This document shows, piece by piece, positions 1,021 to 20,515 of a stretch of 64,000 nucleotides of DNA. Every line of letters begins with the position of its first letter. Within the stretch, counting starts at the first letter, position 1. The stretch covers positions 119,142,397-119,206,396 of the forward strand of contig CM097887.1 in assembly GCA_044892525.1 (NCBI GenBank), written 5' to 3'. The translations under genes were made by a program, and so were the position numbers. The stretch is from Schmidtea polychroa. Taxonomy: Eukaryota. The notes beneath the pieces are model-generated. The model was not told the DNA's origin and searched no databases. It saw only the letters and a program-made list of their open reading frames with translations.

Positions 1021-1402
1021 TCCTGATATTGTGTCGTTATATAGTAATAGTCAAACTGGTGGAGAATTGCCATATTTTATGGGTAAGCAATATGGATCCG
1101 GATGGTTGCAAACAATTGGAAGGTTCGCACTTCCAATACTTAAAAAGATTGGTTCATTTGGCATGAGAACAGCAAAGGATGTGATAATGAAAGATCAAAA
1201 AATACTACCAACATTGAAAAGACATGCAATGAATGAAATTTGGAAATTGATGCCAAGTGCAGCAAAGATTTCTAAACCAAATGAAACTAAAAAACCTCCA
1301 ACATCAACACCACAACAAATTTTGGGTAAGCGACGAAAATCTCGTATAAACAAAAGATGGAAAGGTCGTGGAACAATATTCGAAAATGATGATCTCCGGT
1401 AA
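1013..1402 (+). CDS. Polinton basic core/maturation-substrate protein
   Basis: 129 aa. QTGG..PYF.GKQYGSGWL..IGRFALPILKKIG motif and Lys/Arg-rich C-terminus; sits between the minor and major capsid genes. Homolog at 19093-19494. Confidence 0.7.
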   Translation: MSNPDIVSLYSNSQTGGELPYFMGKQYGSGWLQTIGRFALPILKKIGSFGMRTAKDVIMKDQKILPTLKRHAMNEIWKLMPSAAKISKPNETKKPPTSTPQQILGKRRKSRINKRWKGRGTIFENDDLR

Positions 1403-2615
1403 AACTGAATTGTGTATTTTTGATCGTCCGTCTCCACAAGTAGTAATTGAAAATGGAATATTTGAAGATGTATTTCCTATGAATTCAATTACTGATTCAA
1501 GGAATGATGTAGAATTTTTTGTTAACGGTTCACAGACTGAATATTTAGATTTGAATGACACTCTATTATCCATTCAGCTGAAGGTTGTAGATAAAGACAA
1601 TAAAGATCTGGCAGATGGTGTTGATGTAATTCCAACCAACTACATGTTTCATACTCTATTTAAAGATGTTATTCTGGGTTTTAATAATATCAAAATCGAA
1701 GGTGGCAACAACACATATGCACACAAAGCTTTAATTGAAACAATTTTAAACTATAATGGAGATACAAAAAGTATTTGTCTTGCGCCGATGGGTTATGGAA
1801 GTAAAGATTTTAGGAAAACATGGATTGCGAAATCAAGACTGTTTTCAATGTGTTCATCATTACAACTAGATTTTATGGATCAGCCTAAATATCTACTTCC
1901 AGGAGTTAATGTACATATTCGTATGAAGAGATCAGACTCAAAATTTTGTTTGGATACATCTGTAGCTGGAGCATCACCAAAATATCAGTTGGTTGATGCA
2001 AAATTAATGGTTCGCTGTGTACGAGTTGAGTCATCAGTGTTGGCTGGCCATCAGATTGGTCTTAATTCACAACATGCGATTTATCCTATCAAAACCAAAG
2101 AAATTGTTGCCTTTGCAATAAGTAAAGATTCATCCTCATTTTATAAAGAACAAATATTTGGCGATAAACGTTTGCCAAATTTTATTCTTGTAACCTTCCA
2201 ATCAGAAGCACAATATAATGGTTCATATACAGAAACTAGCTCAAAATTCGCACATTTCAGTATAACTTCTTTAACTTTATCAAAAAATTCCGATTATCGT
2301 GAAACATATACTCAAGATTTCGACAACGATAACTATGCTGCGACCTATATGCAATCTATAGTTCGAAATATGGGTTATTTAGATAAGAATTTAAATTGCG
2401 GAATCGACATTGTAGATTTTAAGACCAAATATCCTTTCTTTACATTCATTTTGGCTCCAGACTTTGATTGGAATCAAAGTCAATTGCCACAAAATGGAAA
2501 TCTGAGACTTGATATTAAATTCAACAAGGCTTTAACATCTCCTGTATATGTAATTATTTATGGAGTTTTTGAAAGCGAAATACAGATTTCAGCAAATCGG
2601 TCAATTCTAGTTTAA
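1386..2615 (+). CDS. Polinton major capsid protein (double jelly-roll, PY-type)
   Basis: KTELCIFDRPSPQ, EYLDLNDTLL, DFMDQPKYLLPGV and G.LRLDIKF motifs. Start placed at ATG 1386/1389 by comparison with the copy-B start MISAKSELCIF (ORF track starts at 1368). Confidence 0.88.
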   Translation: MMISGKTELCIFDRPSPQVVIENGIFEDVFPMNSITDSRNDVEFFVNGSQTEYLDLNDTLLSIQLKVVDKDNKDLADGVDVIPTNYMFHTLFKDVILGFNNIKIEGGNNTYAHKALIETILNYNGDTKSICLAPMGYGSKDFRKTWIAKSRLFSMCSSLQLDFMDQPKYLLPGVNVHIRMKRSDSKFCLDTSVAGASPKYQLVDAKLMVRCVRVESSVLAGHQIGLNSQHAIYPIKTKEIVAFAISKDSSSFYKEQIFGDKRLPNFILVTFQSEAQYNGSYTETSSKFAHFSITSLTLSKNSDYRETYTQDFDNDNYAATYMQSIVRNMGYLDKNLNCGIDIVDFKTKYPFFTFILAPDFDWNQSQLPQNGNLRLDIKFNKALTSPVYVIIYGVFESEIQISANRSILV

Positions 2616-2628
2616 ACAAAGATGAAGT

Positions 2629-3013
2629 ATGGAGTAAGTTTACTTTCTGATAAACGATTTACTTGATTAGTTCTGTTCAGCTTAATTGTATTGCATCAAA
2701 TCTGTTTGGAGACAGGTTTTTAGGAGTTTATCCGCTGGATAAAATCCCTTTTCTTGAAAGTAACAATGCTTTAATAGTCAATACCCAATCCTCAAGTCTT
2801 GATGGCGAACATTGGCTAGCAGTATTTGTTAAACCTGAAAAGATTAAAGTGTTTGATCCGATGGGTTACTATTATCCGCCTCTATTAGTGTCGAAGTTAT
2901 CGAAATTATCAAAACCTATCGTGTACAATAGAATTCGTTATCAAGAACCGCTAACAGTTACATGTGGACAACATTGTATTGTTTGGTTATGTTTTGAGTT
3001 TAATAAATATTAG
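2629..3013 (+). CDS. Adenain-like (clan CE) cysteine maturation protease, spliced (intron 2634-2670)
   Basis: IVNT...GEHWLAV (His), FDPMG (Asp), Q.....TCGQHC (Gln/Cys). The only suitable ATG is at 2629: ATG GA|gtaagt...gattag|T TCT GTT CAG gives MDSVQLN. Confidence 0.88.
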
Positions 3014-3156: not shown

Positions 3157-6100
3157 TCATGCAAATATATTATCATCATTATCAACAATATTTATACTAT
3201 AGTGTCCATATGCAAAACTTTTGTTCCGACCCACCCATACCCTTTTATCATCCTTATTTGACAGAGCCAACTTTGTTGATTTAAATGTGTAAAGTTGATG
3301 ATTTTTGGACCCAAGCCTCGTTTGTATGACTTTAGGTATTTCCATTCCATTAAAACAGTCGATGTATGATTGATGATCTATCTCAGTTTCATTCAATCTA
3401 ATACCTTTGGCTTTAATAGTTTTCTTTGGACCACCCAACAAACTATAAAGCTTTGGCCGAAGAAATATCCATTCATCATATAGGACTCCCTTACTTTCAT
3501 CCTTAAACTTTCCTATAACAGAATCCAATCTTCTGTTATACAGCGGATGAGACGAATTATAATTAGATGCATCCAATAGATTATCTTGGATCATAGCTTC
3601 TAATAATGTTTGCAATTTAAGATTCTTAATTTCCAAGAAGAATGAATCCGTATCCCCTGCTGCTATATTAATCTCACAATTGAACTGTTCACGATACTTT
3701 TGTAGTTCTATATACTGCAGCTCATACATTCTTAGTTTGGAGAGATCTAAAACTGTTTGTTCAATATACGAAGGTCTATCCAAACATACAACATCAGGAT
3801 TCATAATTGCAGCTATTAAATCATCTGCAATCTTTATACTTCTCTTGAAGGTTGGTTTTGATGAATATGTTACCATTTTTCTTTGTGAATTGCACAACCT
3901 TAAATTCATCCTCTTCTTTAAATTTTCCACTGTTTTCCCATATAAACTGTTGTTTAATAGTTTATAATATCCCTTCTCCAGTTCAGATGTTGATTGAGCC
4001 CTCAATTTGGTGTTGGCTTCCACATATTCCTTGAAAATAGTTGATTGGTTAAACTTGATTGCCCGATGTATATTTGTTATTTCAACTCCTAAAAACATAT
4101 ACATTTTCAATAGTCGCCAATGAATTACATAGTTTTTCTTCGGGTAATGTGTTAACAGAAGCTTTTCCACTTTTGTTCCTTCTGGACACATCTTCTCTGG
4201 TGCAACAGGTAAATCGTCTAATAAATCATGAATTTCATCTGGAATATTCATATCAACCTCCGACGTATATCCATATGGTAAATTCTCTAGTTTTGATGAT
4301 TTACACTCTTCTAGAATAGTGTCCAAATCAGTATGGATCCATTCAAACTTTCCATATGGCAAACTCTGACTAAGTGCCCATCCATACAAGTTATTTATAT
4401 CGATATATAATAACTCTGTATTTTCATCTCTTCTGACTTGATGTTTATTAACGAAAGTCATACCTCCTCGAATGCCAGCTTCATAATAATTATACATGTC
4501 ATTATCTTGCAACAATTCAATAGGTCTATCCAATGACATTAATGCCGATGCCCATGTCATTCCCGGAATACCGAAAAAATTTAAAGGTTCCAATCCATTA
4601 TGGGCTAGTGATTTAGTTCTGAATTGTTGAAAGTAATCTGCTAAAAGATATACATCCAACTTTAGATATATCATCATATAGTCTAAAAGGGTTTCACATC
4701 CGGTTTCAGACCATATGTTCACTGCTTTATCATATGCGGCTTGTGACACTCCTTCCCAAATTGGTGGCAATTCTCTGGTTTCTCGTAGAACTTCCAGGCT
4801 TGTGGCAAAATAGTATGGAAAAATACCTTTTGAATCCTGTATTGTTCCCGTAAATGCTGCATTTGTAATTGGTAAGCTGTTTATTGTTTTTACTGCATTA
4901 TCCAAAGATTCATTTACAAACTGATATGAATCAATGAATTTGATCTTTATTTGCTTACAATGCGCAATAAGCGTAAGAAATTTTTCGGATGTTGTCGGAA
5001 TACAACTCAAATTCCAGTGAGGGAATTTATTTATGCCATATTTTAAAATATGATGCATATCATAACCTCTCAGGTTATGAAATACTACTGGAAGCACTCG
5101 ACGTACTCTTCTTGAAAGATTACATTTTCCACATGCCGCACCTAAATATTTCCCGCTGAAATGATCATGATCTCGAACCAAATGATCACAGTGTTCCTTA
5201 CATATATAACAAAATGATTGCATATTAAAAGAGGATTGTTCCGTTGGACTGAGAATTAAAGGTTGTTTACCATTTCTCTGGTAATAATGATTTACTTTAT
5301 TTTCTGCTATTTCCTCTACTTTCTTTAAAAAATCAAATATACAATTTAACCCAATAAATTGAAAATATGAGGAAGCTCCGCTAAAATTGTTTATCAGCAA
5401 AAGTCCAGCTGAAATCGGTAAGTGTTTCTGATGGTATTGCTGATCGTCTGGTAAAATAGATTCGAAATCAGCATAGATTACGAAAGGTGGAGTCACTTTC
5501 TTCGACCAATCTTTGAATCTGAGCTCTTTTTCTGTTGGCATAACGTACAAAGTTGTCCCAAGCTGATTTTTCTTACATAAAGCCAGATGTCTTTCATATG
5601 TCAATTGTCTCCGAAATCCATTTAGACAATTTACACACCATATACATTGAATTCGAACTGTACAATTATTGGATACATGACAGTTCATTAACCTGTTGAT
5701 ATTAGGTATTCCAACGTAATGGTAATTATTACTTTCACTTAGTAATAATAAATATATTGGTGTAACATCTTTAACCTTTGTCCTCCGAATTATGTCTATA
5801 TTCGGATGTTTCATAACAACATCATCATCATCATTATTTAAATATGTATCATCCGACTCGTATGAGAGAACATTGATCGCCAATCCTGGATTCTGATCTT
5901 CAAATTTCTTTATGTCATTCAATGTTGTCGGAGGGTTTTCCAAATCGTAATTTACTTCATTCATGTACCGATAATATTGTGACGGTCTGTTACGGTTTTC
6001 ATGAATGTCTTCGTATTTCAATATAGACAAAACGCTGTAGATAAAACACAGATTGTCTTGATTTTGGATGTTTATAATTTTATTCTTTAATGATGCCGGG

Positions 6101-7380
6101 GTTCTTATGTGTCGATGTCCAGACAATCGACTAATTTCGGCAAACTTTGTTATTTTAAAATTAATCTCCAGTATCCTGTTAAGACGCCAACTGCTACCCA
6201 ACTCCGATCTAATAGCAATTTTCTCATTCAAACTTTCGATTCCTTCATCTAAAAAGTCATCTGTTAATTTTGTGGCTCTATTTGAAATTCTTGCAGTCTT
6301 CAGCTCACCATCTTTGACGAATTCTGCATTGATCCCGAACTGTATCTTAACGCTCTTCATTTCATTTATACAAGCGTTTAATTTTATCAACAACGTTGGT
6401 GGAATAACTATTTTTTGTATATTATAACAAGATATGTCCAGTGTGATAATTCTATGTGTTCTGTATAAATCACATTCAATTTCCGGTTCATCTGATATTC
6501 CTGCTCCTGTTTGAAAGTCATCAACTAGTGAGTAGTGATCTGCATAGTCAGTACTATCACTGTCAACATTCGATATATTTTCGTTTTGATCATTGAAATC
6601 TAGTTCTTCTATTATTTCAAACGATCCATTTATTATATCAATTTCTTCTTCTTCAGATCTTCCGACGTCTTCGCACCTTGAACTTCCAACTTCTTCACGC
6701 CTTGAACTTCCAACTTCTTCACGCCTTGAACTTCCTGCTTCTTTGCGCCTTGAACTTCCAGCTTCTTTACGCCTTGAAGTTCCAGCGTATTCGCACCTTG
6801 AACTTCCAACTTCTTCACGCCTTGAACTTCCTGCTCCTTTGCGCCTTGAACTTCCAGTTTCTTCATGCCTCGAATCTTCTTCCTCCGAATCCATGATTAC
6901 AATTATTTCTGAGTTTGATATTGCATTTTCTATTTTCTCCAATCTTGCTTTTTTATTTTTAATTAAGTGAGTGGAAACCTTTCTTTTGATAAGCTTATCT
7001 TCACGCCTTGAACTTCCTGCTTCTTTGCGCCTTGAACTTCCAGTTTCTTCATGCCTCGAATCTTCTTCCTCCGAATCCATGATTACAATTATTTCTGAGT
7101 TCGATATTGCATTTTCTATTTTCTCCAATCTTGCTTTTTTATTTTTAATTAAGTGAGTTGAAACCTTTCTTTTGAAAAGCTTATCTTTACGCATCACAAA
7201 TTGATTTAAATGTGTCTTATGCGTGTTATAAAAGGACATGTAGGGATCGGAACTTAAAGTTTCGCAATATGGGCATAAAAAGTAATTTTGTTGATAATAT
7301 GTTTTGCCATAATATGTTTGCATGATTTTATGACAGCTTTTATTGTGACTACTGTTTTGACAATAATTTGGGTATAACAC
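3157..7380 (-). CDS. Protein-primed family B DNA polymerase (pPolB) with long N-terminal extension
   Basis: 1407 aa open frame. ExoI IYADFES, ExoII FHNLRGYD, ExoIII YLKLDV; endonuclease-VII-like Zn motif CYIC..RDHDHFSGKYLGAACGKCN; PolA DINNLYG, PolB KLLNNSLYGKT, PolC GDTDS. True start uncertain (GTG 7380, or a later ATG). Confidence 0.95.
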   Translation of the reverse strand: MLYPNYCQNSSHNKSCHKIMQTYYGKTYYQQNYFLCPYCETLSSDPYMSFYNTHKTHLNQFVMRKDKLFKRKVSTHLIKNKKARLEKIENAISNSEIIVIMDSEEEDSRHEETGSSRRKEAGSSRREDKLIKRKVSTHLIKNKKARLEKIENAISNSEIIVIMDSEEEDSRHEETGSSRRKGAGSSRREEVGSSRCEYAGTSRRKEAGSSRRKEAGSSRREEVGSSRREEVGSSRCEDVGRSEEEEIDIINGSFEIIEELDFNDQNENISNVDSDSTDYADHYSLVDDFQTGAGISDEPEIECDLYRTHRIITLDISCYNIQKIVIPPTLLIKLNACINEMKSVKIQFGINAEFVKDGELKTARISNRATKLTDDFLDEGIESLNEKIAIRSELGSSWRLNRILEINFKITKFAEISRLSGHRHIRTPASLKNKIINIQNQDNLCFIYSVLSILKYEDIHENRNRPSQYYRYMNEVNYDLENPPTTLNDIKKFEDQNPGLAINVLSYESDDTYLNNDDDDVVMKHPNIDIIRRTKVKDVTPIYLLLLSESNNYHYVGIPNINRLMNCHVSNNCTVRIQCIWCVNCLNGFRRQLTYERHLALCKKNQLGTTLYVMPTEKELRFKDWSKKVTPPFVIYADFESILPDDQQYHQKHLPISAGLLLINNFSGASSYFQFIGLNCIFDFLKKVEEIAENKVNHYYQRNGKQPLILSPTEQSSFNMQSFCYICKEHCDHLVRDHDHFSGKYLGAACGKCNLSRRVRRVLPVVFHNLRGYDMHHILKYGINKFPHWNLSCIPTTSEKFLTLIAHCKQIKIKFIDSYQFVNESLDNAVKTINSLPITNAAFTGTIQDSKGIFPYYFATSLEVLRETRELPPIWEGVSQAAYDKAVNIWSETGCETLLDYMMIYLKLDVYLLADYFQQFRTKSLAHNGLEPLNFFGIPGMTWASALMSLDRPIELLQDNDMYNYYEAGIRGGMTFVNKHQVRRDENTELLYIDINNLYGWALSQSLPYGKFEWIHTDLDTILEECKSSKLENLPYGYTSEVDMNIPDEIHDLLDDLPVAPEKMCPEGTKVEKLLLTHYPKKNYVIHWRLLKMYMFLGVEITNIHRAIKFNQSTIFKEYVEANTKLRAQSTSELEKGYYKLLNNSLYGKTVENLKKRMNLRLCNSQRKMVTYSSKPTFKRSIKIADDLIAAIMNPDVVCLDRPSYIEQTVLDLSKLRMYELQYIELQKYREQFNCEINIAAGDTDSFFLEIKNLKLQTLLEAMIQDNLLDASNYNSSHPLYNRRLDSVIGKFKDESKGVLYDEWIFLRPKLYSLLGGPKKTIKAKGIRLNETEIDHQSYIDCFNGMEIPKVIQTRLGSKNHQLYTFKSTKLALSNKDDKRVWVGRNKSFAYGHYSINIVDNDDNIFA
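6655..7190 (-). repeat. Coding repeats in pPolB N-terminus: 27-nt tandem units plus a ~175-nt duplication
   Basis: Units GAACTTCC(A/T)(A/G)CTTCTT(C/T)(A/G)CGCCTT encode GSSRR(K/E)E(A/V). The block KRKVSTHLIKNKKARLEKIENAISNSEIIVIMDSEEEDSRHEETGSSRRK occurs twice. Confidence 0.95.
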
Positions 7381-8464: not shown

Positions 8465-9190
8465 AAAATATTACCGGTTATTTTTGATTTAAATTGAAGG
8501 GTTTTTGATTTTACAAATTGAAATTTATTTTGAAAGCTTTTCTTATTGTAATTGAACATAGAATCGAAACTTATAAAATTAATACTGGAACGTATTAACA
8601 TCATTAAAAAATTAATTTAAATTTAATATTATGATAAATGAAAGCGGGTAAAACATTTAGTTTATTATAAAATTTATTAAAAAATAGTATTTAATTAAAA
8701 TTTAATTTATTATAAAAATTTAAAACTAACATTTAGCATAGAAATCTTCCATATCATTTCCTTGATCGATATCGCAAACTATTTTCTAAACGAAAAACTT
8801 AATATATATATATATTAAATAAATATTACCGGAAAAATATTACCGGTTATTTTTGATTTAAATTGAAGGGTTTTTGATTTTACAAATTGAAATTTATTTT
8901 GAAAGCTTTTCTTATTGTAATTGAACATAGAATCGAAACTTATAAAATTAATACTGGAACGTATTAACATCATTAAAAAATTAATTTAAATTTAATATTA
9001 TGATAAATGAAAGCGGGTAAAACATTTAGTTTATTATAAAATTTATTAAAAAATAGTACTTAATTAAAATTTAATTTATTATAAAAATTTAAAACTAACA
9101 TTTAGCATAGAAATCTTCCATATCATTTCCTTGATCGATATCGCAAACTATTTTCTAAACGAAAAACTTAATATATATATATTAAATAAA
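8465..9190. repeat. ~369-bp near-perfect tandem duplication (2 copies)
   Basis: TTACCGGTTATTTTTGATTT starts at 8471 and 8840, and the following sequence is repeated nearly identically. Confidence 0.92.
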
Positions 9191-9608
9191 TAAAGTTTAC
9201 CGTTTGGTTATTAATATTTGGCATTCTTCTTCTTTTATTCTGATTGAATAATATCTAAAAGAAAAGAAAATAAATATTTAACAAGAGCAAAATAAAATCT
9301 TACTTGTTAGATAAAAATTTATTGATTAAATGAAATTTAAATGTAATATTAAAACAATAGTTAATCTAAGCAACTATTGTTAGCAACCAAATAGAATCTT
9401 CTAGAATTTTTTTATATAAATAAGAATATTCTTTTTATTCATAGATTTTGTTCATAGATAAATAATAACTAATTATTGTATCTAAATATTTATTGTTACC
9501 AATCAACTAGAATGTTCTAGAATGTTCTAGAACATTCTAGGTTGATCTAGAATGTTATTATTAATATGTAAGTAATAAATATGAATTTTATGCAAGTTAA
9601 ATTAACTA

Positions 9609-10042
9609 TCAAAGTTTATAAATTTTTATTAAATTGACAAAAAATATAATGAAACGTTTAAACATAGTTCTTAACCAAAAATGTAACTCTAATTTTTTTA
9701 TATATTTCCAGTCACCATTTTCTTTGATCCATGGGTAAATTTTTGTAATTTCTTGCACTGGCCAGTTCATATATTTTGGATGTTCATTTGGACATAAAAT
9801 AAGAATGTTTCTGACGTACATTAAGCTAACGATGACTTTAGACCAACATATGCCATCCTGAAACAACGATTCAAAGACATCCTTGAATGTTTTTCCTGAT
9901 TACCTTCCGATGATAAAATAGAAGAGAAATCAATGGTACATCGAAGCTCTACTTCTTTTATTATTTTTAATAAACAATTTATTGTTTGATCATCACTTTT
10001 ATAAATTAAACCATTGACAATGGCGATTATGTATTCATTCAT
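9609..10042 (-). CDS. Bcl-2-like protein, split by a 1-nt frameshift in an A5 run (plus-strand T 9890-9894)
   Basis: Adding one A joins ORFs 9821-10042 and 9609-9866 into ~144 aa with BH1-like TFKDVFESLFQDGICWSKVIV, BH2-like IYPWIKENGDW and a hydrophobic/basic tail. Confidence 0.78.
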
Positions 10043-10197
10043 TGTAAAAATGAATGTATCTTGAAATTATTATGCAAGACTAATGCATATTTTGATTGGT
10101 TAATGTAACAAGTATTTGATTTGTTGATAAAATGAACAAATGAGATATGTATGTGAGACAGTGTGTGTATAGAACTTAAAGTTTATCATTATTTCAA

Positions 10198-10608
10198 ATG
10201 TTGAATATGAAGAATGAGCAACCGTTATTTAAAGCAACTTATATTTTTCATGAGCATCAAATACATTTACTAGTCAATCCAATCAATTACAATTTGTTGA
10301 TTCCTGTTGAACTAGTGAAAACTAGTTACAATTACTGGATTGAAGAATTCTCTCAAGAAGATCAAGAAGCGATTACTACAATATTTGGACGAATCAACAA
10401 GCAACTTATAGTTAATGAAAATGGTTCATTCATAGGCGGTCCATCAACGAAATTTTATGATGAAGACGAGAATCAAATCCCATTTAAACCTAATGCTAAA
10501 TGGAATATGAAAATTCGCATTCAAGGTTATAAAATAGCGCCAAGTACAGCAATATTACCTATATGGAAAATTGTAAGTGGAAAATTGCAAAGAAATTATG
10601 TATGTTAA
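10198..10608 (+). CDS. Polinton accessory protein, possibly an OB-fold ssDNA-binding protein
   Basis: 136 aa. The C-terminal block MKIRIQGYK...ILPIWKIV is shared with ORF 16496-16693 in element B. The SSB assignment is resemblance only. Confidence 0.55.
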   Translation: MLNMKNEQPLFKATYIFHEHQIHLLVNPINYNLLIPVELVKTSYNYWIEEFSQEDQEAITTIFGRINKQLIVNENGSFIGGPSTKFYDEDENQIPFKPNAKWNMKIRIQGYKIAPSTAILPIWKIVSGKLQRNYVC

Positions 10609-10747
10609 TATCTTATGTTATTTTTATTAAATAAATGTTTCTGTTTAAAAATCGTGTTGTTATGATATCATAATTTGGTTGTCATAATAATATTTAAAAT
10701 TTAAAATAATCAATATAATTACCTAGAGTTATCCATTATTTTCAATA

Positions 10748-11083
10748 ATGTTAGTAAATAGTAATTACCGTCGAATAATGGGTTGCGAAAAACCTATTGA
10801 AAGCATACATTATAATATTAAAGATGTTCATCTTCAATCTTGTACAATTACTATTGATATCAAACAACTAATTAATTTGCAATATTTGTCAAAGAAAACA
10901 AAATGTGTATATGAACCAGAAATATTCCCGGGTTTGCGTCTCATATCTTATAACCCCTTGTGTGTAAACTTGTTTTCTAGTGGAAAAATAGTTGTACTTG
11001 GTTTAAAAACTTTAAATTATAATTGGATTGTCAACAAAATTATAAATGATGTAAATGATTTGATTGGTTCACAAAAACGATAA
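10748..11083 (+). CDS. Single-repeat TBP-like (TATA-binding fold) protein
   Basis: 111 aa. LQSCTITIDIKQLINLQYL..YEPEIFPGL..P..VNLFSSGKIVVLGLK aligns by eye with TBP repeat 2 (YEPELFPGL..LIFVSGK.V.TGAK). Only one repeat is present. Confidence 0.82.
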   Translation: MLVNSNYRRIMGCEKPIESIHYNIKDVHLQSCTITIDIKQLINLQYLSKKTKCVYEPEIFPGLRLISYNPLCVNLFSSGKIVVLGLKTLNYNWIVNKIINDVNDLIGSQKR

Positions 11084-11116
11084 ATATTGTACACTTTAAC
11101 ATTTGTTTCATTTATT

Positions 11117-11476
11117 ATGATGTCACAAGTTTCTGAAATCGGTAAATAAATATATTTTATTCTTAAACTTTTAAAATTATGTTTAGATTATCAAATAGAA
11201 ATTCTAATTAATAAAGTGTTTGAGATTTATCCTGAAATCAAAGATGAAATTATAAATTATGCTCCGGAAATTGCACCAGCCAAAATATTTCAGGCAACAG
11301 GGATTAACATAGAGCGCATTATTTTTCACCATAAATTTATGATGTATGGTTATGAAAAGCAAACTCAATTACTAAAAGATTCATGTTGTCAATATCAATG
11401 TCAAGAATGTATTACTTACAAAAGAAAACAAACAGTAAACATTCTACTCAACGAATTGTATAAATATTTCAAATAG
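11117..11476 (+). CDS. Small spliced accessory protein with Cys cluster (intron 11142-11186)
   Basis: ATG ATG TCA CAA GTT TCT GAA ATC G|gtaaat...tttag|AT TAT CAA joins in frame with ORF 11216-11476; contains CCQYQCQEC. Confidence 0.6.
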
Positions 11477-11826
11477 TTTTTAATAAATGTTTCATTGTTT
11501 TGAAAATTTAATTAGAAATAGTTAATATTTTTAAAATTGCGCGCGAAAAATAATTTTTAAAACCAAGATTCGAGATCTCTGATATGAATTACATATAAAA
11601 CAAAAACATTGGTATTAATATCTCTATTTATATTGGCTCTATATATTAATCAAATGAGTTTATTTAAACAAATATTCATAGTTGACGCAATAACAGTATA
11701 CATTTGAACAAAGATTTGAAATCTCCATTCAAAAATACTATAGAAAGCTGAAAGTCCCATCAAAATATGTAAATTTTACGATGCACTGTCATAAATAGAA
11801 TCGTTGAAAATATTTCAAAGTCCGTC

Positions 11827-13422
11827 GGACATAGCCGAATTTTTGAGAATTATCGATTGGTTTTACTTTTTCTTAATTCCTGAGAGAACCAAGAAATTTT
11901 TCGAGGATTTTATTTCGGAATCTTCTTAGTTGAATCAAGACGCAACTTTTTTGTTAAGGATGTCTCGACTAAATATACTTGGTTCCCAATGTTCCAAAAA
12001 TTATTCCTTAAAAACGTGAAATTTATATTGAAAAGAAATCTTTTCGTTGATTTTCTTATAAAATAATCTGTGTCGACAAATAACAAATCTTTTTTCGTGG
12101 AAAATGTCTGGGTGAAATCTTTAATGTAAGAAAGGCACATCTGACTAAATTTTGCACTTTTTGCACTTTTTGCACTTTTCACTTAAAAATCAATATATGC
12201 GCGATAACTCATCGATCAAACGCGCAATAACTCATCAGTAGGGGGGTGGGGGGTATATATGCGCGATAACTCATCGATCAAACGCGCAATAACTCATCAG
12301 TAGGGGGTGGGGGTATATATGCGCGATAACTCATCGATCAAACGCGCAATAACTCATCAATCAAAATCCGTGATAATTCATAATACATTCGGACATAGCC
12401 GAATTTTTGAGAATTATCGATTGATTTCACCTTTTCTTAATTCCTGAGAGAACCAAGAAACTTTTCGAGATCTTTATTAAAGAATCTTCTTAGTTGAATC
12501 AAGACGCAACTTTTTTGTTAAGGATGTCTCGACTAAATATACTTGGTTCCCAATGTTCCAAAAATTATTCCTTAGAAACGTGAAATTTATATTGAAAAGA
12601 AATCTTTTCGTTGATTTTCTTATAAATTAATCTGTGTCGACAAATAACAAATCTTTTTTCGTGGAAAATGTCTGGGTGAAATCTTTAATGTAAGAAAGGC
12701 ACATCTGACTAAATTTTGCACTTTTTGCACTTTTTGCACTTTTCACTTAAAAATCAATATATGCGCGATAACTCATCGATCAAACGCGCAATAACTCATC
12801 AGTAGGGGGGTGGGGGGTATATATGCGCGATAACTCATCGATCAAACGCGCAATAACTCATCAGTAGGGGGTGGGGGTATATATGCGCGATAACTCATCG
12901 ATCAAACGCGCAATAACTCATCAATCAAAATCCGTGATAATTCATAATACATTCGGACATAGCCGAATTTTTGAGAATTATCGATTGATTTTACCTTTTC
13001 TTAATTCCTGAGAGAACCAAGAAACTTTTCGAGATCTTTATTAAAGAATCTTCTTAGTTGAATCAAGACGCAACTTTTTTGTTAAGGATGTCTCGACTAA
13101 ATATACTTGGTTCCCAATGTTCCAAAAATTATTCCTTAGAAACGTGAAATTTATATTGAAAAGAAATCTTTTCGTTGATTTTCTTATAAATTAATCTGTG
13201 TCGACAAATAACAAATCTTTTTTCGTGGAAAATGTCTGGGTGAAATCTTTAATGTAAGAAAAGCACATCTGAATAAATTTTACACATTTTGCACATTTTG
13301 CACATTTTGCACATTGCACTTAAAAATCAATATATGCGCGATAACTCATCGATCAAACGCGCAATAACTTATCAGCAAGGGGGAGGGGGAGGGGGGGTTA
13401 TATATGCGCGATAACTCATACT
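11827..13422. repeat. 564-bp tandem repeat (~2.8 copies) with nested 60-62 bp G-run subrepeats at the putative terminus of element A
   Basis: GGACATAGCC at 11827, 12391 and 12955. Subrepeat GCGCGATAAC at 12199, 12261 and 12321, separated by GGGGG(G)TGGGGG(G). Confidence 0.95.
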
Positions 13423-14419
13423 GATTCATGGGGCTCACATCTACCTACTAATGTGATTTTTACTTTGCATTAATAAGTCAGTAGTTATCATTTAAAAGAA
13501 GAATGTTTTGTAAATTAGAATTCATTAGTCTTTCATTGTAATTTAAATTATTTTGAATTCCACGTGGTGATAAGTTGACAATTATTCATTTTTTGATGAA
13601 AATCAACATTTTTGTTAAATTTAAAAAGGTTTTTCTACTGATTGTAATTAAATATATTTTTGAAGATAGATAAAAAATTAATTTTAAAAAATACATTTCA
13701 TAAAATACAATAAAGAATATTTAGTAGTTAGTTGTAAGTATGTCTTTGTTTGAGAGTTAGTTAGTACGTGGTATCATGTTGTAAGTATTTGTTAGCACCT
13801 AGTTAAAAATATTTAATAACCGATTGTCGGTAACTGTTGAATTATTATTTTTATTATTATTATTCCATTAAAATTTGACATTGACTTTGAAAAATATTTC
13901 ATTGAAATTAACTTAAAAAATTAACTTAAAAATTATTTCATTAAAATTTTCATTAAAAATTAACTTAAAAAATTATTTCATTAAAATTTACTTTTAAAAT
14001 TAACTTAAAAAAAATTCCATTTAAATTTTCATTAAAAATTACATTTCTCAAAAAAGTAGGTGGTTATTCAAACTTTTGATAATAAATTTAAAAATCTTAC
14101 TTAAATTTACTTATTTAGCTTTAATTTTAAATTTTGAACCTTAATTTTTCTTAATTTATCCTTAATTTACCTAATTATTCTTTATTTCTTAATTTTACAC
14201 CATAATTTACTTAACAACTAAATATAATCCTTATTTTCATATTTAACCAATAATTTCATGTGGTCATTGATTAATTGACGAAGATTTGCATCTAAAATTA
14301 ACATTGAAAATCCCAGAAAACTTTCATCTTAAATTGACTTTAACTTTAATATTTTAGATCATTGATTAGTTAATTTAAAAATTAAACATTAATTTACCTA
14401 TTTAACCAATAATTTCATG

Positions 14420-15430
14420 TGGTCATCTAGTTGTAAGTGTTTGGTATCTAGTTGACAGTGCTTAGTACTAGGTAAGTTACTTGGTTGTTAGTACTTGGTT
14501 GATAATGCTTAGTACCTGGTTGATGTTGGTTGTAAGTACTGGGTAGGTGGTAGTTAGTTGTTAGTATCTAGTTGTAGGTACTTAGTTGATAATGCTTAGT
14601 ACCTGGTTGTTGTTGGTTGTTAGTACATGGTAGGTGGTAGCTAGTTGGTTGTAGGTACTTAGTAGTTGGTTAATAATGCTTAGTACCTGGTTGATGTTGG
14701 TTGTAAGTACTCGGTATCTGGTACCTAGTTGGTTGGTTGTTTTGGTTGTATGTACTTGGTAACAGGTAACTGGTTGTTAGTAACTAGTTGTAGGTTGTAA
14801 GTGTTTGGTATTTAGTTGACAGTGCTTAGTAGTTGGTTGTTGTTGGTTGTAGGTACTTGGTTTCAGGTAACTGGTTGTTAGTAACTAGTTGTAGGTATCT
14901 GGTTGTTGTTGGTTGTATGTACTTGGTAGGTGGTAGCTAGTTGGTTGTAGGTATCTAGTTGTAGGTATCTGGTTGGTTGCTTGTTTTTGGTTGTTAGTAC
15001 TTGTTAGATGGTTGTAGGTACTTAGTATCAGGTAACTAGTTGTTAGTAACTAGTTGTAGGTACTTGGTATCTGGTAATTTGTTGTAGGTACTTGGTATCT
15101 AGTTGACAGGGCTTAGTACTTGTTTTCTAGTTGTTAGTACTTGGTTGGTGGTAGCTAGTTGGTTGGTTGTAAGTACATAGTTGGTTGTAGGTACTTAGTA
15201 GTTGGTATCAGGTTGTTGTTATCTAGTTGTAGGTATCTGGTTGATGTTGGTTATAAGTAGTTGGTAGGTGGTTGTAGGTACGTAGTAGTTGGTTGTTGTC
15301 GGTTGTTATTATTTGGTATCTTGTATTTGGTATCAGGTAACTGGTTGTTAGTATCTAGTTGTAGGTATCTGGTTGCAAATACATGTTCGTAAGTTACTGG
15401 TTGTTGGTACTTAGTTGTTGGTTTGTTGTT
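14420..15430. repeat. G/T-skewed degenerate short-unit array
   Basis: Shuffled units such as TAGTTG, GGTTG, GTAGGTA(C/T)CT and CTTAGTA over ~1 kb; no long ORF; flanked on both sides by similar AT-rich blocks. Confidence 0.85.
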
Positions 15431-15689
15431 GAATTATTATTAAAATTTGTCTTTGAAAAATATTTCATAAAAATTTCCATCTAAAATTATTTTAAAAATT
15501 TCCATCTAAAATTATCATAGAAAAATATTTCATAAAAATTTCCATTAAAAATTAACTTAAAAAATTATTCCATAAAAATTTCCATTAAAAATTACCATTG
15601 AAAAATATTTTATTAAAATTTTCATTAAAAAATTTCAATTCTCAAACACCTTCTATTATTTCAACTTTTTGTTAATAAATTTTAAAATC

Positions 15690-16215
15690 TTACTTTAATT
15701 TACTTTAATTTACTTATTTAAAAAATTATTACTTTAATTTACTTATTTAATTTTAATTTTAATTTTTTACTTTGATTACTTAATTTTAAAATTTGGACCT
15801 TAATTAACTTTAATTTAATTTTTTAGAACCTTAATTTAGTTATTTGAGCCCATTCATTACTTTAATTTAATTTTTTAGGACCTTAATTTACTTTATTTTA
15901 ATTTTTTTAGAACCATTATTTACTTAATTTATAAATTTGAACCTTAATTTACTTAGTTGAGCCCTTATTTAACTTTAATTTTAAATTTTGAACCATTATT
16001 TACTTTAATTTAAAAATTTGAACCTTAATTTAGTTATTTGAGCCCATTCATTACTTTAATTCAAAAATCTTAGCCCATAATTTACTTATTTAGACCATAA
16101 TTTACTTTATTTCAAAAAAAATCTGAACCTTGATTTACTTAAATTTAATTTTTTAGACCCATCATTTACTTAAATTTAATTTTTAGAACCATTATTTACT
16201 TTAATTGAAAAATTT
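15690..16215. repeat. AT-rich degenerate tandem array
   Basis: Recurring TTACTTTAATTT...GAACC/GAGCCC units of roughly 35-45 bp. Confidence 0.7.
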
Positions 16216-17422: not shown

Positions 17423-17807
17423 TCAAAGATCTTTCATTGACTTCAACCACGCTAAACAATGTTGCCCACATGTTTTTGTCAATGGACTTTGATAGCGAAT
17501 TTTATTATATTCAATTGGCATTAACAATGATTGAAGTTTTGATATTAATAGAGGAGGATAATAAAACCCCATGGGATCAAATGCATATATTTTTCCGGTT
17601 TCACATAAACTGCGAGCCAATGCTCTCCCATGAGATTACAAGATTGAGTATTTACAATTAAAGCCTTGTTTACATCAATATATGGTATTTTATCTAATGG
17701 AAAAACTCCAAGAAATTCAGCTCCGAACAATCTTCGACCTATGTATTCAATCTGAATAGAACTATTATCAATAAATTAAAGTAATAAAAATGAAATTCTT
17801 ACTTCAT
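17423..17807 (-). CDS. Adenain-like protease of element B, spliced (intron 17762-17802), 1-nt frameshift
   Basis: ATG AA|gtaag...aatag|T TCT ATT CAG gives MNSIQIEY. GEHWLAV, FDPMG and TCGQHC are present. Frame broken in an A5 run (plus-strand T 17590-17594). Confidence 0.85.
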
Positions 17808-17869
17808 TTTTAATAATTATTGTTTCCTAATTTGGTTTATAGTTCAAGCCAATCATTTTCAAACTTTAT

Positions 17870-19096
17870 TTACACTAGTACTGTACGATTGGATGTAATT
17901 TGAATCTCTTTTTCAAAGACGCCATAGACTATTACAGAAATTGATTCTGTTAGAGGTGTTCCAAATTTAATATCAAGTCTTAAATTTCCTTGCTGTGGCA
18001 ATTGACTTTGATTAAGATCAAAGTCTGGAGCCAATACAAATGTAAAGAATGGATACTTTTCTTTAAAGTCAGACATACTAATTCCACAATTAATATTCTT
18101 ATTAAGGTAACCCATGTTTCTAATTATTGACTGCATATAACTTGTACTATAATTATCATTTTCAAAATCTTGACTATATTTTTCACGATAGTCGCTTCCT
18201 TTCAATAAAGTTATTGATTTTACATTATTGTGGTCGTACATTGAATAAGAATTTGTTAGTGATCCATTATTTCTTTTATTTCTTTGAAATGTTACAAGGA
18301 TAAAATTTGGTAATCGCCGATCACCAAAGATTTGTTCTTTATAAAAAGAAGAAGATCCAGTAGGTAACGAAAATTCGACAACTTCCTTGCTTCTCAAAGG
18401 ATAAATTGCATTTCTTGAAGCAAGTCCAATTTGATGACCAGCTAAAACGGATGGTTCAACTCGAACTCTTCTTACCATTAATTTTGCATCTAATAATTCA
18501 ATTTTAGGTTCTACTTTTGTACATGTTAAACTATGTGATGGACTTGATCTCGTCAATTTAATTTGGACACTAACACCAGGTAATAAATATTTTGGTTGAT
18601 CCATAAAATCAAATTGTATTGGTGAACATAATGAAAATGGTTTAGATTTTGCAATCCACGCTTTTCTTATATTATCATCTTCACTGTACCTCATACCTTC
18701 TAAACATGTACGTTTTGTATCATGATTGTAATTTAATATGGTTTCGATTAATGCTTTATGAGCAAATGTATCATTTCCTCCTTCAACTTTAATAGAATTA
18801 AAAATTAATTCAGCTTCTTTAAAAAGAGTTTGGAAAAAGAAATTGTTTGCAGTTACAACAGAATCATCAGAAATATTTTCACCTACATTATTTACAACTT
18901 TCAACTGAAGATAAAGTAAAGTATCATTCAAATCTAAATATTCGGTTTGAGATCCGTTAATGTAAAATTGAATTGAAGAGGTACCAGTATCCGTAATTGA
19001 ATTCGTTGGATAAATATCTTCAAATGAACCATGTTCAATTACTGCTTGAGGTGATGGTCTATCAAAAATACATAATTCAGATTTTGCACTAATCAT
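17870..19096 (-). CDS. Polinton major capsid protein (element B)
   Basis: 408 aa, intact; same motifs as 1386-2615 but clearly diverged. Confidence 0.88.
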   Translation of the reverse strand: MISAKSELCIFDRPSPQAVIEHGSFEDIYPTNSITDTGTSSIQFYINGSQTEYLDLNDTLLYLQLKVVNNVGENISDDSVVTANNFFFQTLFKEAELIFNSIKVEGGNDTFAHKALIETILNYNHDTKRTCLEGMRYSEDDNIRKAWIAKSKPFSLCSPIQFDFMDQPKYLLPGVSVQIKLTRSSPSHSLTCTKVEPKIELLDAKLMVRRVRVEPSVLAGHQIGLASRNAIYPLRSKEVVEFSLPTGSSSFYKEQIFGDRRLPNFILVTFQRNKRNNGSLTNSYSMYDHNNVKSITLLKGSDYREKYSQDFENDNYSTSYMQSIIRNMGYLNKNINCGISMSDFKEKYPFFTFVLAPDFDLNQSQLPQQGNLRLDIKFGTPLTESISVIVYGVFEKEIQITSNRTVLV

Positions 19097-19494
19097 TTTT
19101 CGAATATAGTTCCAAAGCCTTTCATTCTTTTGTTTATATGCTTCTTTAATGTTTTTCTGCGTTTAATCATTCCACCTTTTTGTTCATTCTCTTGTTTATT
19201 TAAAACATCAAATACTTTATTAATTACAGTAGGCAAATGTTGAATTACATCAGGTAGTGAATGTTTAATTTCAGATAAAACATTTGATTTTAAAGCAGGT
19301 AGAATTTTTGAATTGTTATTTATTACATCATGTGCAGTTTTCATACCAAAATTACCTATGCGTCTAAGAATTGGTAAAGCAAATCGACCTATTGTTTTTA
19401 ACCAACCTGTTCCATATTGTTTACCAACAAAATATGGTAAATCTCCACCAGATTGACTTTTACTATAAAAGTTTACAATATCAGGATTATTCAT
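19093..19494 (-). CDS. Polinton basic core protein (element B)
   Basis: 133 aa; QSGGDLPYFVGKQYGTGWL..IGRFALPILRRIG; basic C-terminus. Confidence 0.7.
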   Translation of the reverse strand: MNNPDIVNFYSKSQSGGDLPYFVGKQYGTGWLKTIGRFALPILRRIGNFGMKTAHDVINNNSKILPALKSNVLSEIKHSLPDVIQHLPTVINKVFDVLNKQENEQKGGMIKRRKTLKKHINKRMKGFGTIFEK

Positions 19495-20515
19495 TTATTT
19501 TACGAAAATGTAGTGTTAAATGTGTTTTGGTGTCTTTTGAAAATTTAACTAAATTTCCACTATCGTTGCGAATATTAATTTCAATGTTGTTTATAGATGA
19601 AGATGAAATTGGAAGGTACATTGGGTTCTTTATTTCTAACTGTACTACCTCTCCCTGTTCATATCTTTTAATCCATATCGATTTTAATAGAGGAACTCTT
19701 ACATCACCAACATTTATTGGTTCAATGATATTAGAATAAATAAACATTTGTTGATGAATTTTAAATATTTTTGGAATTTTCACACCAACAAAGTCTTTTT
19801 CATTATAAGTTTGATTCTTTAATCCTAAAGCTTTTGTTAATTTTTGAACAAAGGTAATATTTGAAATATCTACAAGTGTTATTTTTACCAATTCTTGATT
19901 TTGAAGATGTATTTCTTTAAATGGAGATGGATTAATTGTCATTAAATATCCTCGCAACTCTGATAAAGTAGTTAAGAATAATTCATCTTCAAAATAATGT
20001 TCGAATTTTGTCTTGATATCGTAATTTATAGTTATCCCAATTTGTTCAATGATATTATTTTCAGTAAATTTAGGTAATTTAATTCGACAATGGTCAGTTT
20101 TGCTAATGATTGATATGGTTTTTAATTCAAACTTAGATGCAGGTTTGGTGTCAAGAAATGATATTTTAAATGGAACATGTGGACAAACTATCACTAGGTT
20201 TTCATATCTTTCCAAGAACACATCAACATCTGGATTATACGTAGAATTTAAAATTTCTAAGATTTTGTTTTGATTATCAATTTTCAAGTATTTAGTTTCT
20301 TCGCATGATTTTTTAAATTCGTATTGTACCCATGAATTACTGTAATACGGAAAATGATTATACACAAATGTAAAATCAATCAAAGCTACTTTCCACTTCC
20401 CATTCAAATAAATTGGGTTTTGAAATTCAACTTTAAAATTACTAGCATTATTATCAGGATAAATAAGAGTACAACTATTACTAGGTAAAATCATATAAAA
20501 CTGGTTTTCCTTCAT
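19487..20515 (-). CDS. Polinton minor capsid protein (element B)
   Basis: 342 aa; termini homologous to 10-1020, central region divergent. Confidence 0.8.
   Translation of the reverse strand: MKENQFYMILPSNSCTLIYPDNNASNFKVEFQNPIYLNGKWKVALIDFTFVYNHFPYYSNSWVQYEFKKSCEETKYLKIDNQNKILEILNSTYNPDVDVFLERYENLVIVCPHVPFKISFLDTKPASKFELKTISIISKTDHCRIKLPKFTENNIIEQIGITINYDIKTKFEHYFEDELFLTTLSELRGYLMTINPSPFKEIHLQNQELVKITLVDISNITFVQKLTKALGLKNQTYNEKDFVGVKIPKIFKIHQQMFIYSNIIEPINVGDVRVPLLKSIWIKRYEQGEVVQLEIKNPMYLPISSSSINNIEINIRNDSGNLVKFSKDTKTHLTLHFRKINE

What the first reader, a model, noticed from the sequence alone, without database searches (positions are those of the whole stretch)
10748..11083. Half-TBP: single-repeat TATA-binding-protein homolog encoded by the element
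Seen: an intact 111 aa ATG-TAA ORF with one TBP repeat. It keeps YEPEIFPGL (the acidic EPE stirrup plus Phe) and LFSSGK (second Phe). Known: cellular TBP is a two-repeat pseudo-dimer; these two Phe intercalate into DNA and the repeat-2 EPE stirrup binds TFIIB. Inference: a one-repeat protein could homodimerise into a symmetric saddle with two TFIIB stirrups, acting as a viral late-promoter factor, or it could be a TFIIB decoy for host shut-off. Either would be unusual for a Polinton, which lacks its own RNA polymerase.
Basis: partly seen in the sequence, partly recalled or inferred. Interest (0 to 1): 0.87.

Follow-up and report, generated by a model that had tools for sequence, protein, structure and literature searches.

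The report
Truncated copy of Polinton mini-TBP gene
The ORF is a real TATA-binding-protein homologue carried by a Polinton/adintovirus-like element. Its family is a compact two-lobed TBP, and this copy has lost most of one lobe through a single in-frame deletion, so the 'half-TBP' is probably a damaged copy, not a designed single-repeat factor.

Summary
The 111-aa ORF at 10748..11083 (+) exists as described. It passes Pfam's TBP threshold (42.8 bits against a cutoff of 22.9) with one repeat and keeps the acidic stirrup and both Phe of that repeat. Its relatives show it is not a designed half-TBP. A profile search finds a large family of roughly 145-175-aa proteins. In every assessable relative (13 of 13 loci), a roughly 50-residue N-terminal lobe precedes the full repeat in the same reading frame.

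AlphaFold models a full-length relative at pLDDT 97 as a nine-stranded saddle. The N-lobe is four strands with no helices, and the rest is a complete TBP repeat. Foldseek aligns this model over the whole of cellular two-repeat TBPs. The window copy has one in-frame deletion of about 35-38 codons that removes most of the N-lobe, and no N-lobe coding sequence lies elsewhere in the 64 kb.

The gene family sits in Polinton/adintovirus-like contigs, next to a conserved partner gene of unknown function, and evolves under purifying selection (dN/dS 0.15). A TBP gene in such elements was already noted by Starrett et al. 2021. The likely family role is a virus-encoded TBP surrogate that recruits host polymerase to element promoters. 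The window copy is probably a recent deletion allele.

The parts
10748..11083 (+). TBP-like gene. It has one complete TBP repeat plus short remnants of the family's N-terminal lobe. Relative to the family it carries one in-frame deletion of about 35-38 codons.
10198..10608 (+). 136-aa gene of unknown function. It is a conserved neighbour of the TBP gene in related elements.
   Evidence: Homologues lie next to TBP in L009, L008, L006 and L089, with a weak one in L007. There is no Pfam, PDB or PHROG match.
9609..10042 (-). Possible Bcl-2-like accessory gene, read as two overlapping ORFs in different frames (one frame change). The identification is weak.
   Evidence: PF00452 at E 0.023, 15.6 bits, below the cutoff. 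L007 has a clear Bcl-2 homologue next to its TBP gene.
11216..11476 (+). 86-aa ORF downstream of TBP, with no detectable relatives. It may or may not be a gene.
3157..7380 (-). Protein-primed family B DNA polymerase of element copy A, intact. The longest ORF includes an N-terminal extension with internal tandem repeats.
   Evidence: Relatives are 45-61% identical and carry PF03175 plus PF02945. A single tblastn segment matches the L007 PolB.
10..3013 (+). Capsid/maturation module of copy A: a 336-aa penton-like gene, a 129-aa gene, a 415-aa double-jelly-roll major capsid gene and a 116-aa adenain-like protease. All are intact ORFs.
17429..20515 (-). Capsid module of a second, diverged, inverted copy B (68-78% nt identity to A). 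The protease-like gene is read in two frames (one frame change).
20521..21644 (-). Integrase of copy B (rve core plus a chromo-like C-terminus). It is read in three frames relative to the single 341-aa ORF of L007 (two frame changes).
21680..23858 (-). hAT transposon (BED finger, hAT dimerisation domain, 39-nt terminal inverted repeats) lying directly beside copy B's integrase.
11825..16215 (.). Tandem-repeat arrays that separate the TBP module from copy B. No element gene is detectable here.

Best explanation
The ORF is a copy of a gene family carried by Polinton/adintovirus-like elements. The family encodes a compact TBP paralogue of roughly 145-175 aa. Its N-terminal lobe is a degenerate first repeat reduced to four beta-strands without helices, and its C-terminal lobe is a complete TBP repeat. 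Together they form one monomeric DNA saddle. The window copy has lost most of the N-lobe through one in-frame deletion, which leaves a single repeat.

For the family, the most likely mechanism (inferred, not shown) has three steps. The concave sheet binds AT-rich, TATA-like promoter elements of the element, using three of the four conserved kinking Phe. The conserved acidic stirrup of the C-lobe recruits host TFIIB and RNA polymerase II. This gives an element without its own RNA polymerase its own promoter recognition, as the herpesviral TBP mimic does for late genes. Because the repeat-1 helices are absent, it would lack surfaces that cellular regulators of TBP use.

For this particular copy, the most likely state is a recent deletion allele that is non-functional or impaired. 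It has lost one conserved Phe and three of the four N-lobe strands. The remaining frame shows no further decay.
For: TBP identity.

Family architecture:
- The profile search gave 31 cluster representatives at E<=1e-30 and 288 at E<=1e-10. The best hits are about 145-175 aa and cover profile positions 1-143.
- An N-lobe HMM scores 33-78 bits in the TBP reading frame of 13 of 13 assessable loci.
- Pfam finds two TBP stretches in P0001, and all 58 aligned members hit PF00352.
- hhalign matches the last hairpin of the N-lobe to that of the C-lobe (probability 84%, E 8e-6).
- The AlphaFold model of P0001 has pLDDT 97.1 and pTM 0.87, with four strands followed by S1-H1-S2-S3-S4-S5-H2.
- Foldseek aligns that model over 171-176 columns of roughly 180-residue TBPs, TM 0.73-0.79.

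Deletion in the window copy: alignments; no N-lobe signal in any frame of the window; low-confidence N-terminus in the model.

Conserved residues: both stirrup Glu, two C-lobe Phe and one N-lobe Phe are invariant or at least 90% conserved in the family. The window keeps all of the C-lobe ones.

Element context:
- The TBP gene sits among DJR capsid, adenain-like protease, A32-like ATPase, rve integrase and pPolB genes in L001, L004-L008, L089 and L090.
- The window itself has a pPolB, two capsid modules and an integrase.

Selection: dN/dS is 0.145 at dS 0.84 between two relatives.

Precedents: a TBP gene is listed among genes of adinto-like MELD viruses (PMC8502044), and the herpesviral TBP mimic recruits host Pol II (PMC7498053, PMC4893493, PMC12529657).
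Against: - No binding, expression or interaction data exist for any member, so the mechanism rests on conserved residues and analogy.
- The first Phe of the N-lobe is not conserved in the family, so DNA bending may differ from cellular TBP.
- For the window copy, the frame is open for 111 codons in 26% GC DNA and keeps every highly conserved C-lobe residue. The visible genes of neighbouring copy A are all intact. A tolerated or functional short form is therefore not excluded.
- Which element copy the TBP module belongs to is unresolved. No terminal repeats were found, and the ATPase expected beside the module is missing.
- Divergence between the window gene and its relatives is saturated at synonymous sites, so selection on this copy cannot be measured.
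Confidence: 0.8

Rival explanations
1. The short form is functional as a half-TBP. The single repeat homodimerises through its exposed S1 edge into a symmetric saddle with two TFIIB-type stirrups. Alternatively, it pairs with full-length product from other copies and acts as a modulator or decoy.
For: The ORF is intact and keeps all C-lobe residues that are at least 90% conserved. The single repeat models confidently. Monopartite TBP-domain proteins exist and appear functional in some Archaea (PMC3597702). The deletion is in frame.
Against: No other member with this architecture was found among 150 representatives, 13 assessable loci and a metagenome scan. The three '103-aa' and the '127-aa' database gene calls that were checked all have N-lobe sequence upstream, so they are not a short subfamily. 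The neighbouring Bcl-2-like gene looks split and the expected ATPase is missing. No multimer prediction could be run here.
Confidence: 0.12
2. The gene is a captured host TBP fragment (for example from an mRNA) decaying inside a dead element, with no viral function for the family.
For: TBP is a cellular gene, and the window is TE-rich DNA with broken element genes in copy B.
Against: The family is old and diverse, with a derived architecture of its own, and it is syntenic with Polinton genes in many contigs. It is under purifying selection (dN/dS 0.145). Its best PDB sequence matches are archaeal rather than eukaryotic TBPs, at only about 30% identity, which argues against a recent capture from the host.
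Confidence: 0.03
3. The missing segment is an assembly or sequencing artefact, and the real locus encodes the full-length two-lobed protein.
For: The locus lies between tandem repeats and AT-rich DNA, which are hard to assemble.
Against: The gene itself is not repetitive. The junction is in frame and the flanking sequence is unique. There are no N runs in the window.
Confidence: 0.05

Closest known systems
Cellular TATA-binding protein (TBP, PF00352) of Archaea and eukaryotes
   Same: The fold and repeat are the same. The acidic stirrup and both Phe of the C-terminal repeat are conserved. A full-length family member aligns over the whole saddle.
   Different: The family's first repeat is reduced to four strands without helices H1 and H2 and keeps only one of its two Phe. 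The window copy lacks even most of that lobe. The gene is encoded by a mobile virus-like element, not the host core genome.
'TBP' genes noted in adintovirus-like MELD viruses (Starrett et al. 2021, PMC8502044, Fig. 5 legend)
   Same: This is the same kind of element (adinto-like PolB, integrase, adenovirus-like capsid and protease genes) carrying a TBP homologue. Bcl2 homologues are also reported there.
   Different: That paper only labels the gene. It describes no architecture, conservation or mechanism. I could not check whether their sequences belong to this exact family.
Herpesviral TBP mimic (BcRF1 / UL87 / ORF24) of beta- and gammaherpesviruses
   Same: It is a nuclear DNA virus without its own RNA polymerase that encodes a TBP-like protein to direct host Pol II to viral late promoters (PMC7498053, PMC4893493, PMC12529657). 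It is a weak structural match (ranks 23 and 30).
   Different: The herpes proteins are large (about 600-1000 aa), embed a divergent TBP-like domain, and work within a six-protein viral pre-initiation complex. There is no sequence-level relationship shown here. This is a functional analogy only.
TBP-like proteins of giant viruses (Nucleocytoviricota)
   Same: They are the best structural matches in the viral library, for example the Heterosigma akashiwo virus 01 putative TBP at E 3.9e-8.
   Different: They are larger proteins of about 190-500 aa, and they serve viruses that carry their own multisubunit RNA polymerase.
Monopartite TBP-domain proteins of Archaea (TbpA; Brindefalk et al. 2013, PMC3597702)
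   Same: They consist of a single TBP domain as a free-standing protein, which is what the window ORF is as it stands.
   Different: The window protein is derived by deletion from a two-lobed viral family, not from that archaeal group. No such protein came back as a named hit in my searches.

Membership tests
TBP domain (Pfam PF00352) | Score above Pfam's gathering threshold | tested here: met
   42.8 bits against a cutoff of 22.9, E 4.8e-11
TBP domain (Pfam PF00352) | Helix-grip repeat fold S1-H1-S2-S3-S4-S5-H2 | tested here: met
   The AlphaFold model has this order for aa 28-110 with pLDDT above 90. Foldseek aligns it to TBP repeats at rmsd ~2.3 A.
Canonical TBP (two-repeat saddle) | Two tandem repeats forming a ten-stranded saddle in one chain | tested here: not met
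   The window ORF has one Pfam stretch and one repeat in the model. Relatives have a reduced nine-stranded version.
Canonical TBP (two-repeat saddle) | Paired Phe in each repeat that kink DNA | tested here: inconclusive
   Both Phe of the retained repeat align with those of Pyrococcus TBP repeat 2 and are conserved in the family. The N-lobe Phe is absent from the window copy. DNA binding itself was not tested.
Canonical TBP (two-repeat saddle) | Acidic C-terminal stirrup that contacts TFIIB/TFB | tested here: met
   The two Glu are present and aligned to the stirrup of the TBP chain of the TBP/TFB/DNA complex 1ais. They are invariant or at least 90% conserved in the family. This is met at sequence level only.
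Canonical TBP (two-repeat saddle) | Binding to TATA DNA and to TFIIB | not testable with these tools
   No multimer or DNA-complex prediction and no assay was available
Polinton/adintovirus-borne compact TBP family (defined here) | C-lobe with the family's conserved residues | tested here: met
   The family C-lobe HMM scores 113 bits, E 8e-34. All C-lobe columns that are at least 90% conserved are kept.
Polinton/adintovirus-borne compact TBP family (defined here) | Four-stranded N-terminal lobe of about 50 residues in the same reading frame | tested here: not met
   The N-lobe HMM finds nothing in the ORF or anywhere in the window, but it hits 13 of 13 assessable relatives. Only short remnants remain, adding 13.6 bits to the full-profile score.
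Polinton/adintovirus-borne compact TBP family (defined here) | Location in a Polinton-type element beside the conserved 136-aa-type partner gene | tested here: met
Polinton / Maverick (adintovirus-like) element | Protein-primed family B DNA polymerase | tested here: met
   The 1407-aa ORF has relatives that are 45-61% identical and carry PF03175. The window protein itself gave no direct Pfam hit to PF03175.
Polinton / Maverick (adintovirus-like) element | Retrovirus-like (rve) integrase | tested here: met
   PF00665 at 39.5 bits against a cutoff of 32.6, in copy B only, where the gene is broken
Polinton / Maverick (adintovirus-like) element | Double-jelly-roll major capsid protein and adenain-like protease | tested here: inconclusive
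   DJR-like_dom scores 17.5 bits, below the cutoff of 27. Peptidase_C5 scores 22.3 bits against a cutoff of 21.3. Both genes are syntenic with those of the relatives.
Polinton / Maverick (adintovirus-like) element | A32/FtsK-type packaging ATPase | tested here: not met
   It is absent from the window but present in relatives L006, L007, L008, L089 and L090. Copy A runs off the window start.
Polinton / Maverick (adintovirus-like) element | Terminal inverted repeats and target-site duplication | tested here: inconclusive
   None was found for any copy. One end of copy A lies outside the window.
Archaeal monopartite TBP-domain proteins (TbpA) | Descent from that single-domain lineage | tested here: not met
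   The nearest relatives are all two-lobed element-borne proteins. The single-domain state is derived by deletion.

The most novel reading that the evidence does not exclude
The one-lobe product is not a relic. It could be a working half-TBP that homodimerises into a symmetric saddle with two TFIIB-type stirrups. Alternatively, it could pair with or compete against full-length element TBP or host TBP as a transcriptional modulator. Either would be a eukaryotic, virus-borne re-creation of the presumed ancestral single-domain TBP.
Probability: 0.12. Interest if true: 0.8.

Novelty: new variant of a known kind. Interest (0 to 1): 0.5.

Why it matters
Polintons/Mavericks and adintoviruses have no RNA polymerase, and how they control their own transcription is unknown. 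A conserved, purifying-selected minimal TBP, apparently the smallest full saddle yet seen, points to element-directed promoter recognition on host polymerase. It sits next to a conserved partner gene of unknown function. This parallels the herpesviral late-gene TBP mimic but is far simpler. The compact architecture also bears on how much of TBP is needed to form a DNA saddle. The specific window copy matters less. It shows what a one-lobe derivative looks like, but it is probably a damaged allele.

Tried and rejected
**Spliced-on second repeat.** An HMM of the family N-lobe was run against all six-frame stop-to-stop translations of the window and found nothing. The best hit was E 0.14, in a 19-aa piece inside a tandem array. 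Rejected.

**A second TBP copy for element copy B.** None was found.

**A natural short subfamily.** Thirteen of the best 150 representatives begin at the conserved Met just after the N-lobe. All three that I could inspect (L006, L091, L092), plus the 127-aa calls (L004, L005), have N-lobe sequence upstream. In most it is in the same frame; in L092 it is split by one frame change. These short calls are start-choice artefacts or broken copies. Rejected.

**Close relatives in other collections.** The IMG/VR scan found nothing. The metagenome scan gave only two family loci, at 51% identity, and otherwise cellular TBPs.

**Element boundaries.** No terminal inverted repeats were found for any copy, and the non-coding DNA of relatives shows no similarity. 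Whether the TBP module belongs to copy A, to copy B or to a third fragment stays open. Relatives show that the position and orientation of PolB vary.

**dN/dS for the window copy.** Synonymous sites are saturated against every relative, so this is not informative.

**Function of the 136-aa partner.** There is no Pfam, PHROG or PDB match.

**Host identity.** Not determined. A paper search for assembly GCA_004566115 found nothing.

**Not possible here.** Homodimer and TFIIB-complex predictions could not be run, because the tool folds single chains only.

- None was entered into a tool or used in this report. Residue-level statements rest on the tool alignments.
- The tblastn table printed by my script and the tool alignments show piece bounds and gaps of broken or shortened genes. 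My reasoning also worked through their reading frames and positions. I do not repeat those positions here and have deleted nothing.

Full report
**1. The observation**

The ORF at 10748..11083 (+) is there: ATG to TAA, 111 aa, with both quoted motifs. An in-frame stop lies shortly upstream, so it cannot be longer.

- Pfam PF00352 (TBP) matches at 42.8 bits (cutoff 22.9, E 4.8e-11) with one stretch, aa 27-88.
- phmmer against PDB returns only TBPs. Archaeal ones come first (E about 1e-11).
- The alignment to the Pyrococcus TBP of the TBP/TFB/DNA complex puts the acidic stirrup and both Phe opposite those of repeat 2.
- AlphaFold with a 64-sequence alignment gives pLDDT 88.1. There is one confident repeat (S1-H1-S2-S3-S4-S5-H2) after a low-confidence first 25 residues.
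- Foldseek aligns the model to a single repeat of solved TBPs (80-88 columns, rmsd about 2.3 A).

**2. The surroundings**

The window is AT-rich, transposon-rich eukaryotic DNA. It holds three hAT-type genes, a pogo-like DDE_1 gene and a gag-like zinc-knuckle ORF.

It also holds two diverged, inverted copies of a Polinton-type capsid module, 68-78% identical at the nucleotide level.

- Copy A lies at 10..3013 (+). It encodes a 336-aa penton-like gene, a 129-aa gene, a 415-aa double-jelly-roll capsid gene and a 116-aa adenain-like protease.
- Copy B lies at 20515..17429 (-).
- Copy A is followed by an intact 1407-aa ORF on the minus strand. Its relatives (45-61% identical) carry PF03175 and PF02945, so it is a protein-primed PolB.
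- Copy B has an rve/chromo integrase read in three frames (two frame changes) and a protease read in two frames (one frame change). It has no PolB, and a hAT element with 39-nt inverted repeats lies beside it.
- All visible genes of copy A are intact.

The TBP gene lies 3.4 kb beyond the start of PolB's longest ORF, and tandem-repeat arrays (11825-16215) follow it.

**3. Relatives**

The word-based search found three close relatives of 145-149 aa, 48-60% identical. A profile search of 1.84 billion representatives found 2161 hits at E<=1e-3, 288 at E<=1e-10 and 31 at E<=1e-30. The best are mostly 145-175 aa and cover profile positions 1-143. JGI names some of them TBP.

All of them have about 50 residues before the repeat that the window ORF lacks. 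I built HMMs of this N-lobe and of the C-lobe from 57 relatives.

- The N-lobe HMM hits the TBP reading frame in 13 of 13 assessable loci, at 33-78 bits.
- These include loci whose database gene calls are only 103 or 127 aa. The short calls are therefore start-choice artefacts or, in one case, a copy with a frame change.
- In the window the N-lobe HMM finds nothing in any frame (best E 0.14). The C-lobe HMM scores 113 bits.

The window gene thus differs from its family by one in-frame deletion of about 35-38 codons. No missing lobe could be spliced on from within this window.

**4. What the family is**

The AlphaFold model of relative P0001 (58-sequence alignment) has pLDDT 97.1 and pTM 0.87. 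It shows four strands without helices, a short linker, then a complete TBP repeat. Foldseek aligns it over 171-176 columns of roughly 180-residue cellular TBPs (TM 0.73-0.79, E about 1e-9). One chain therefore makes a whole, nine-stranded saddle.

- Pfam sees two TBP stretches in P0001.
- hhalign matches the last hairpin of the N-lobe to that of the C-lobe (probability 84%, E 8e-6).
- More distant members have a longer first repeat with helix-like segments. The N-lobe is therefore a reduced first repeat.
- The two stirrup Glu, both C-lobe Phe and one N-lobe Phe are invariant or at least 90% conserved.
- Two relatives give dN/dS 0.145 at dS 0.84.

**5. Element linkage**

Where contigs are long enough, the TBP gene lies among Polinton/adintovirus-type genes.

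- In L004, L005 and L001 it follows capsid and protease genes.
- In L006, L008, L089 and L090 it precedes the RING, A32-ATPase, integrase, penton, capsid and protease genes.
- In the 16.3-kb contig L007 it lies next to a Bcl-2 homologue, at the end opposite PolB.

The 136-aa ORF upstream of the window gene has homologues next to TBP in L009, L008, L006 and L089. It has no match in any library. A weak Bcl-2-like ORF pair lies just upstream on the other strand.

So 9609-11476 is an accessory module of such an element. Which copy it belongs to is unresolved. No terminal repeats were found, the ATPase expected beside the module is absent, and PolB position and orientation vary among relatives.

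**6. Mechanism**

Shown:
- the fold;
- the two-lobed family architecture;
- the conserved stirrup and Phe residues;
- purifying selection on the family;
- linkage to elements without any RNA polymerase gene.

Inferred: the family protein binds TATA-like promoter DNA of the element and recruits host TFIIB and Pol II through the C-lobe stirrup. Because it lacks the repeat-1 helices, it would lack surfaces that cellular TBP regulators use. That last point rests on established knowledge of TBP complexes and was not tested here.

The functional precedent is the herpesviral TBP mimic (PMC7498053, PMC4893493, PMC12529657). The nearest viral structural matches are giant-virus TBP-like proteins.

For the window copy, loss of three of the four N-lobe strands and of the N-lobe Phe most likely impairs function. 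The open frame and the untouched conserved residues suggest the deletion is recent. A working homodimer is not excluded; archaeal single-domain TBP proteins exist (PMC3597702).

**7. Novelty and score**

TBP homologues in adinto-like MELD viruses were labelled in a figure of Starrett et al. 2021 (PMC8502044), and automated annotation calls some of these proteins TBP. My paper searches found no description of the compact helix-less first lobe, the breadth of the family, its partner gene or its selection regime.

I rate it a new variant of a known kind, with interest 0.5. The family deserves attention. The specific 'half-TBP' reading is probably wrong.

**8. Slips**

The table printed by my script and the tool alignments show piece bounds and gaps of broken or shortened genes, and my reasoning also worked through their frames and positions.

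Noticed in passing
window 10..3013 (+) and 17429..20515 (-): Two diverged copies (68-78% nt identity) of the same Polinton capsid module lie in inverted orientation about 14 kb apart. Copy A's genes are intact, while copy B's protease and integrase have frame changes.
   Followed up: partly
window 10198..10608 (+); L009:659-1012, L008:421-960, L006:1-489 (-), L089:7082-7429 (-): A gene of unknown function, about 110-140 aa, is a conserved neighbour of the TBP gene in variable orientation. It has no Pfam, PDB or PHROG match and could be a cofactor.
   Followed up: partly
window 9609..10042 (-); L007:12382-12759: There is a weak Bcl-2-like signal (E 0.023) in two overlapping ORFs beside the TBP module. 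Relative L007 has a clear Bcl-2 homologue in the same place, which suggests an animal host.
   Followed up: partly
L006:637-1107, L091:484-975, L004:4015-4509: In several relatives the N-lobe is in frame upstream of the called start, but the gene caller chose a later Met. The true start may be a non-ATG codon or an upstream spliced exon.
   Followed up: no
window 6656..7192 (inside the PolB ORF, minus strand): Tandem repeats of about 24-190 nt lie within the 5' extension of the 1407-aa PolB ORF. Relatives align only from about residue 300 onward, so the real start may be further in.
   Followed up: no
window 11825..13419: A unit of about 564 bp is repeated about 2.8 times at 92-96% identity. 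It contains a G-rich run and 9-nt microrepeats. Further degenerate arrays follow up to 16215, including a strongly GT-skewed block at 14400-15430.
   Followed up: no
window 8465..9202: A near-exact (98-99%) tandem duplication of a 369-bp AT-rich unit lies between PolB and the TBP module.
   Followed up: no
window 21680..23858: An apparently intact hAT transposon (591-aa transposase, 39-nt inverted repeats) is inserted directly upstream of copy B's integrase.
   Followed up: partly
window 32866..33836, 34905..36892, 43731..44390, 57371..59047: There are other transposon genes here. A pogo-like DDE_1 gene and a hAT gene are each split into two ORFs. There is also a gag-like zinc-knuckle ORF and a third hAT-like ORF.
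   Followed up: no
L007, L008, L089, L090: Gene order in relatives is conserved for TBP module, ATPase, integrase, pentons, capsid and protease. PolB, however, appears at either end and in either orientation, as if genomes were circularly permuted or assembled from tandem copies.
   Followed up: partly
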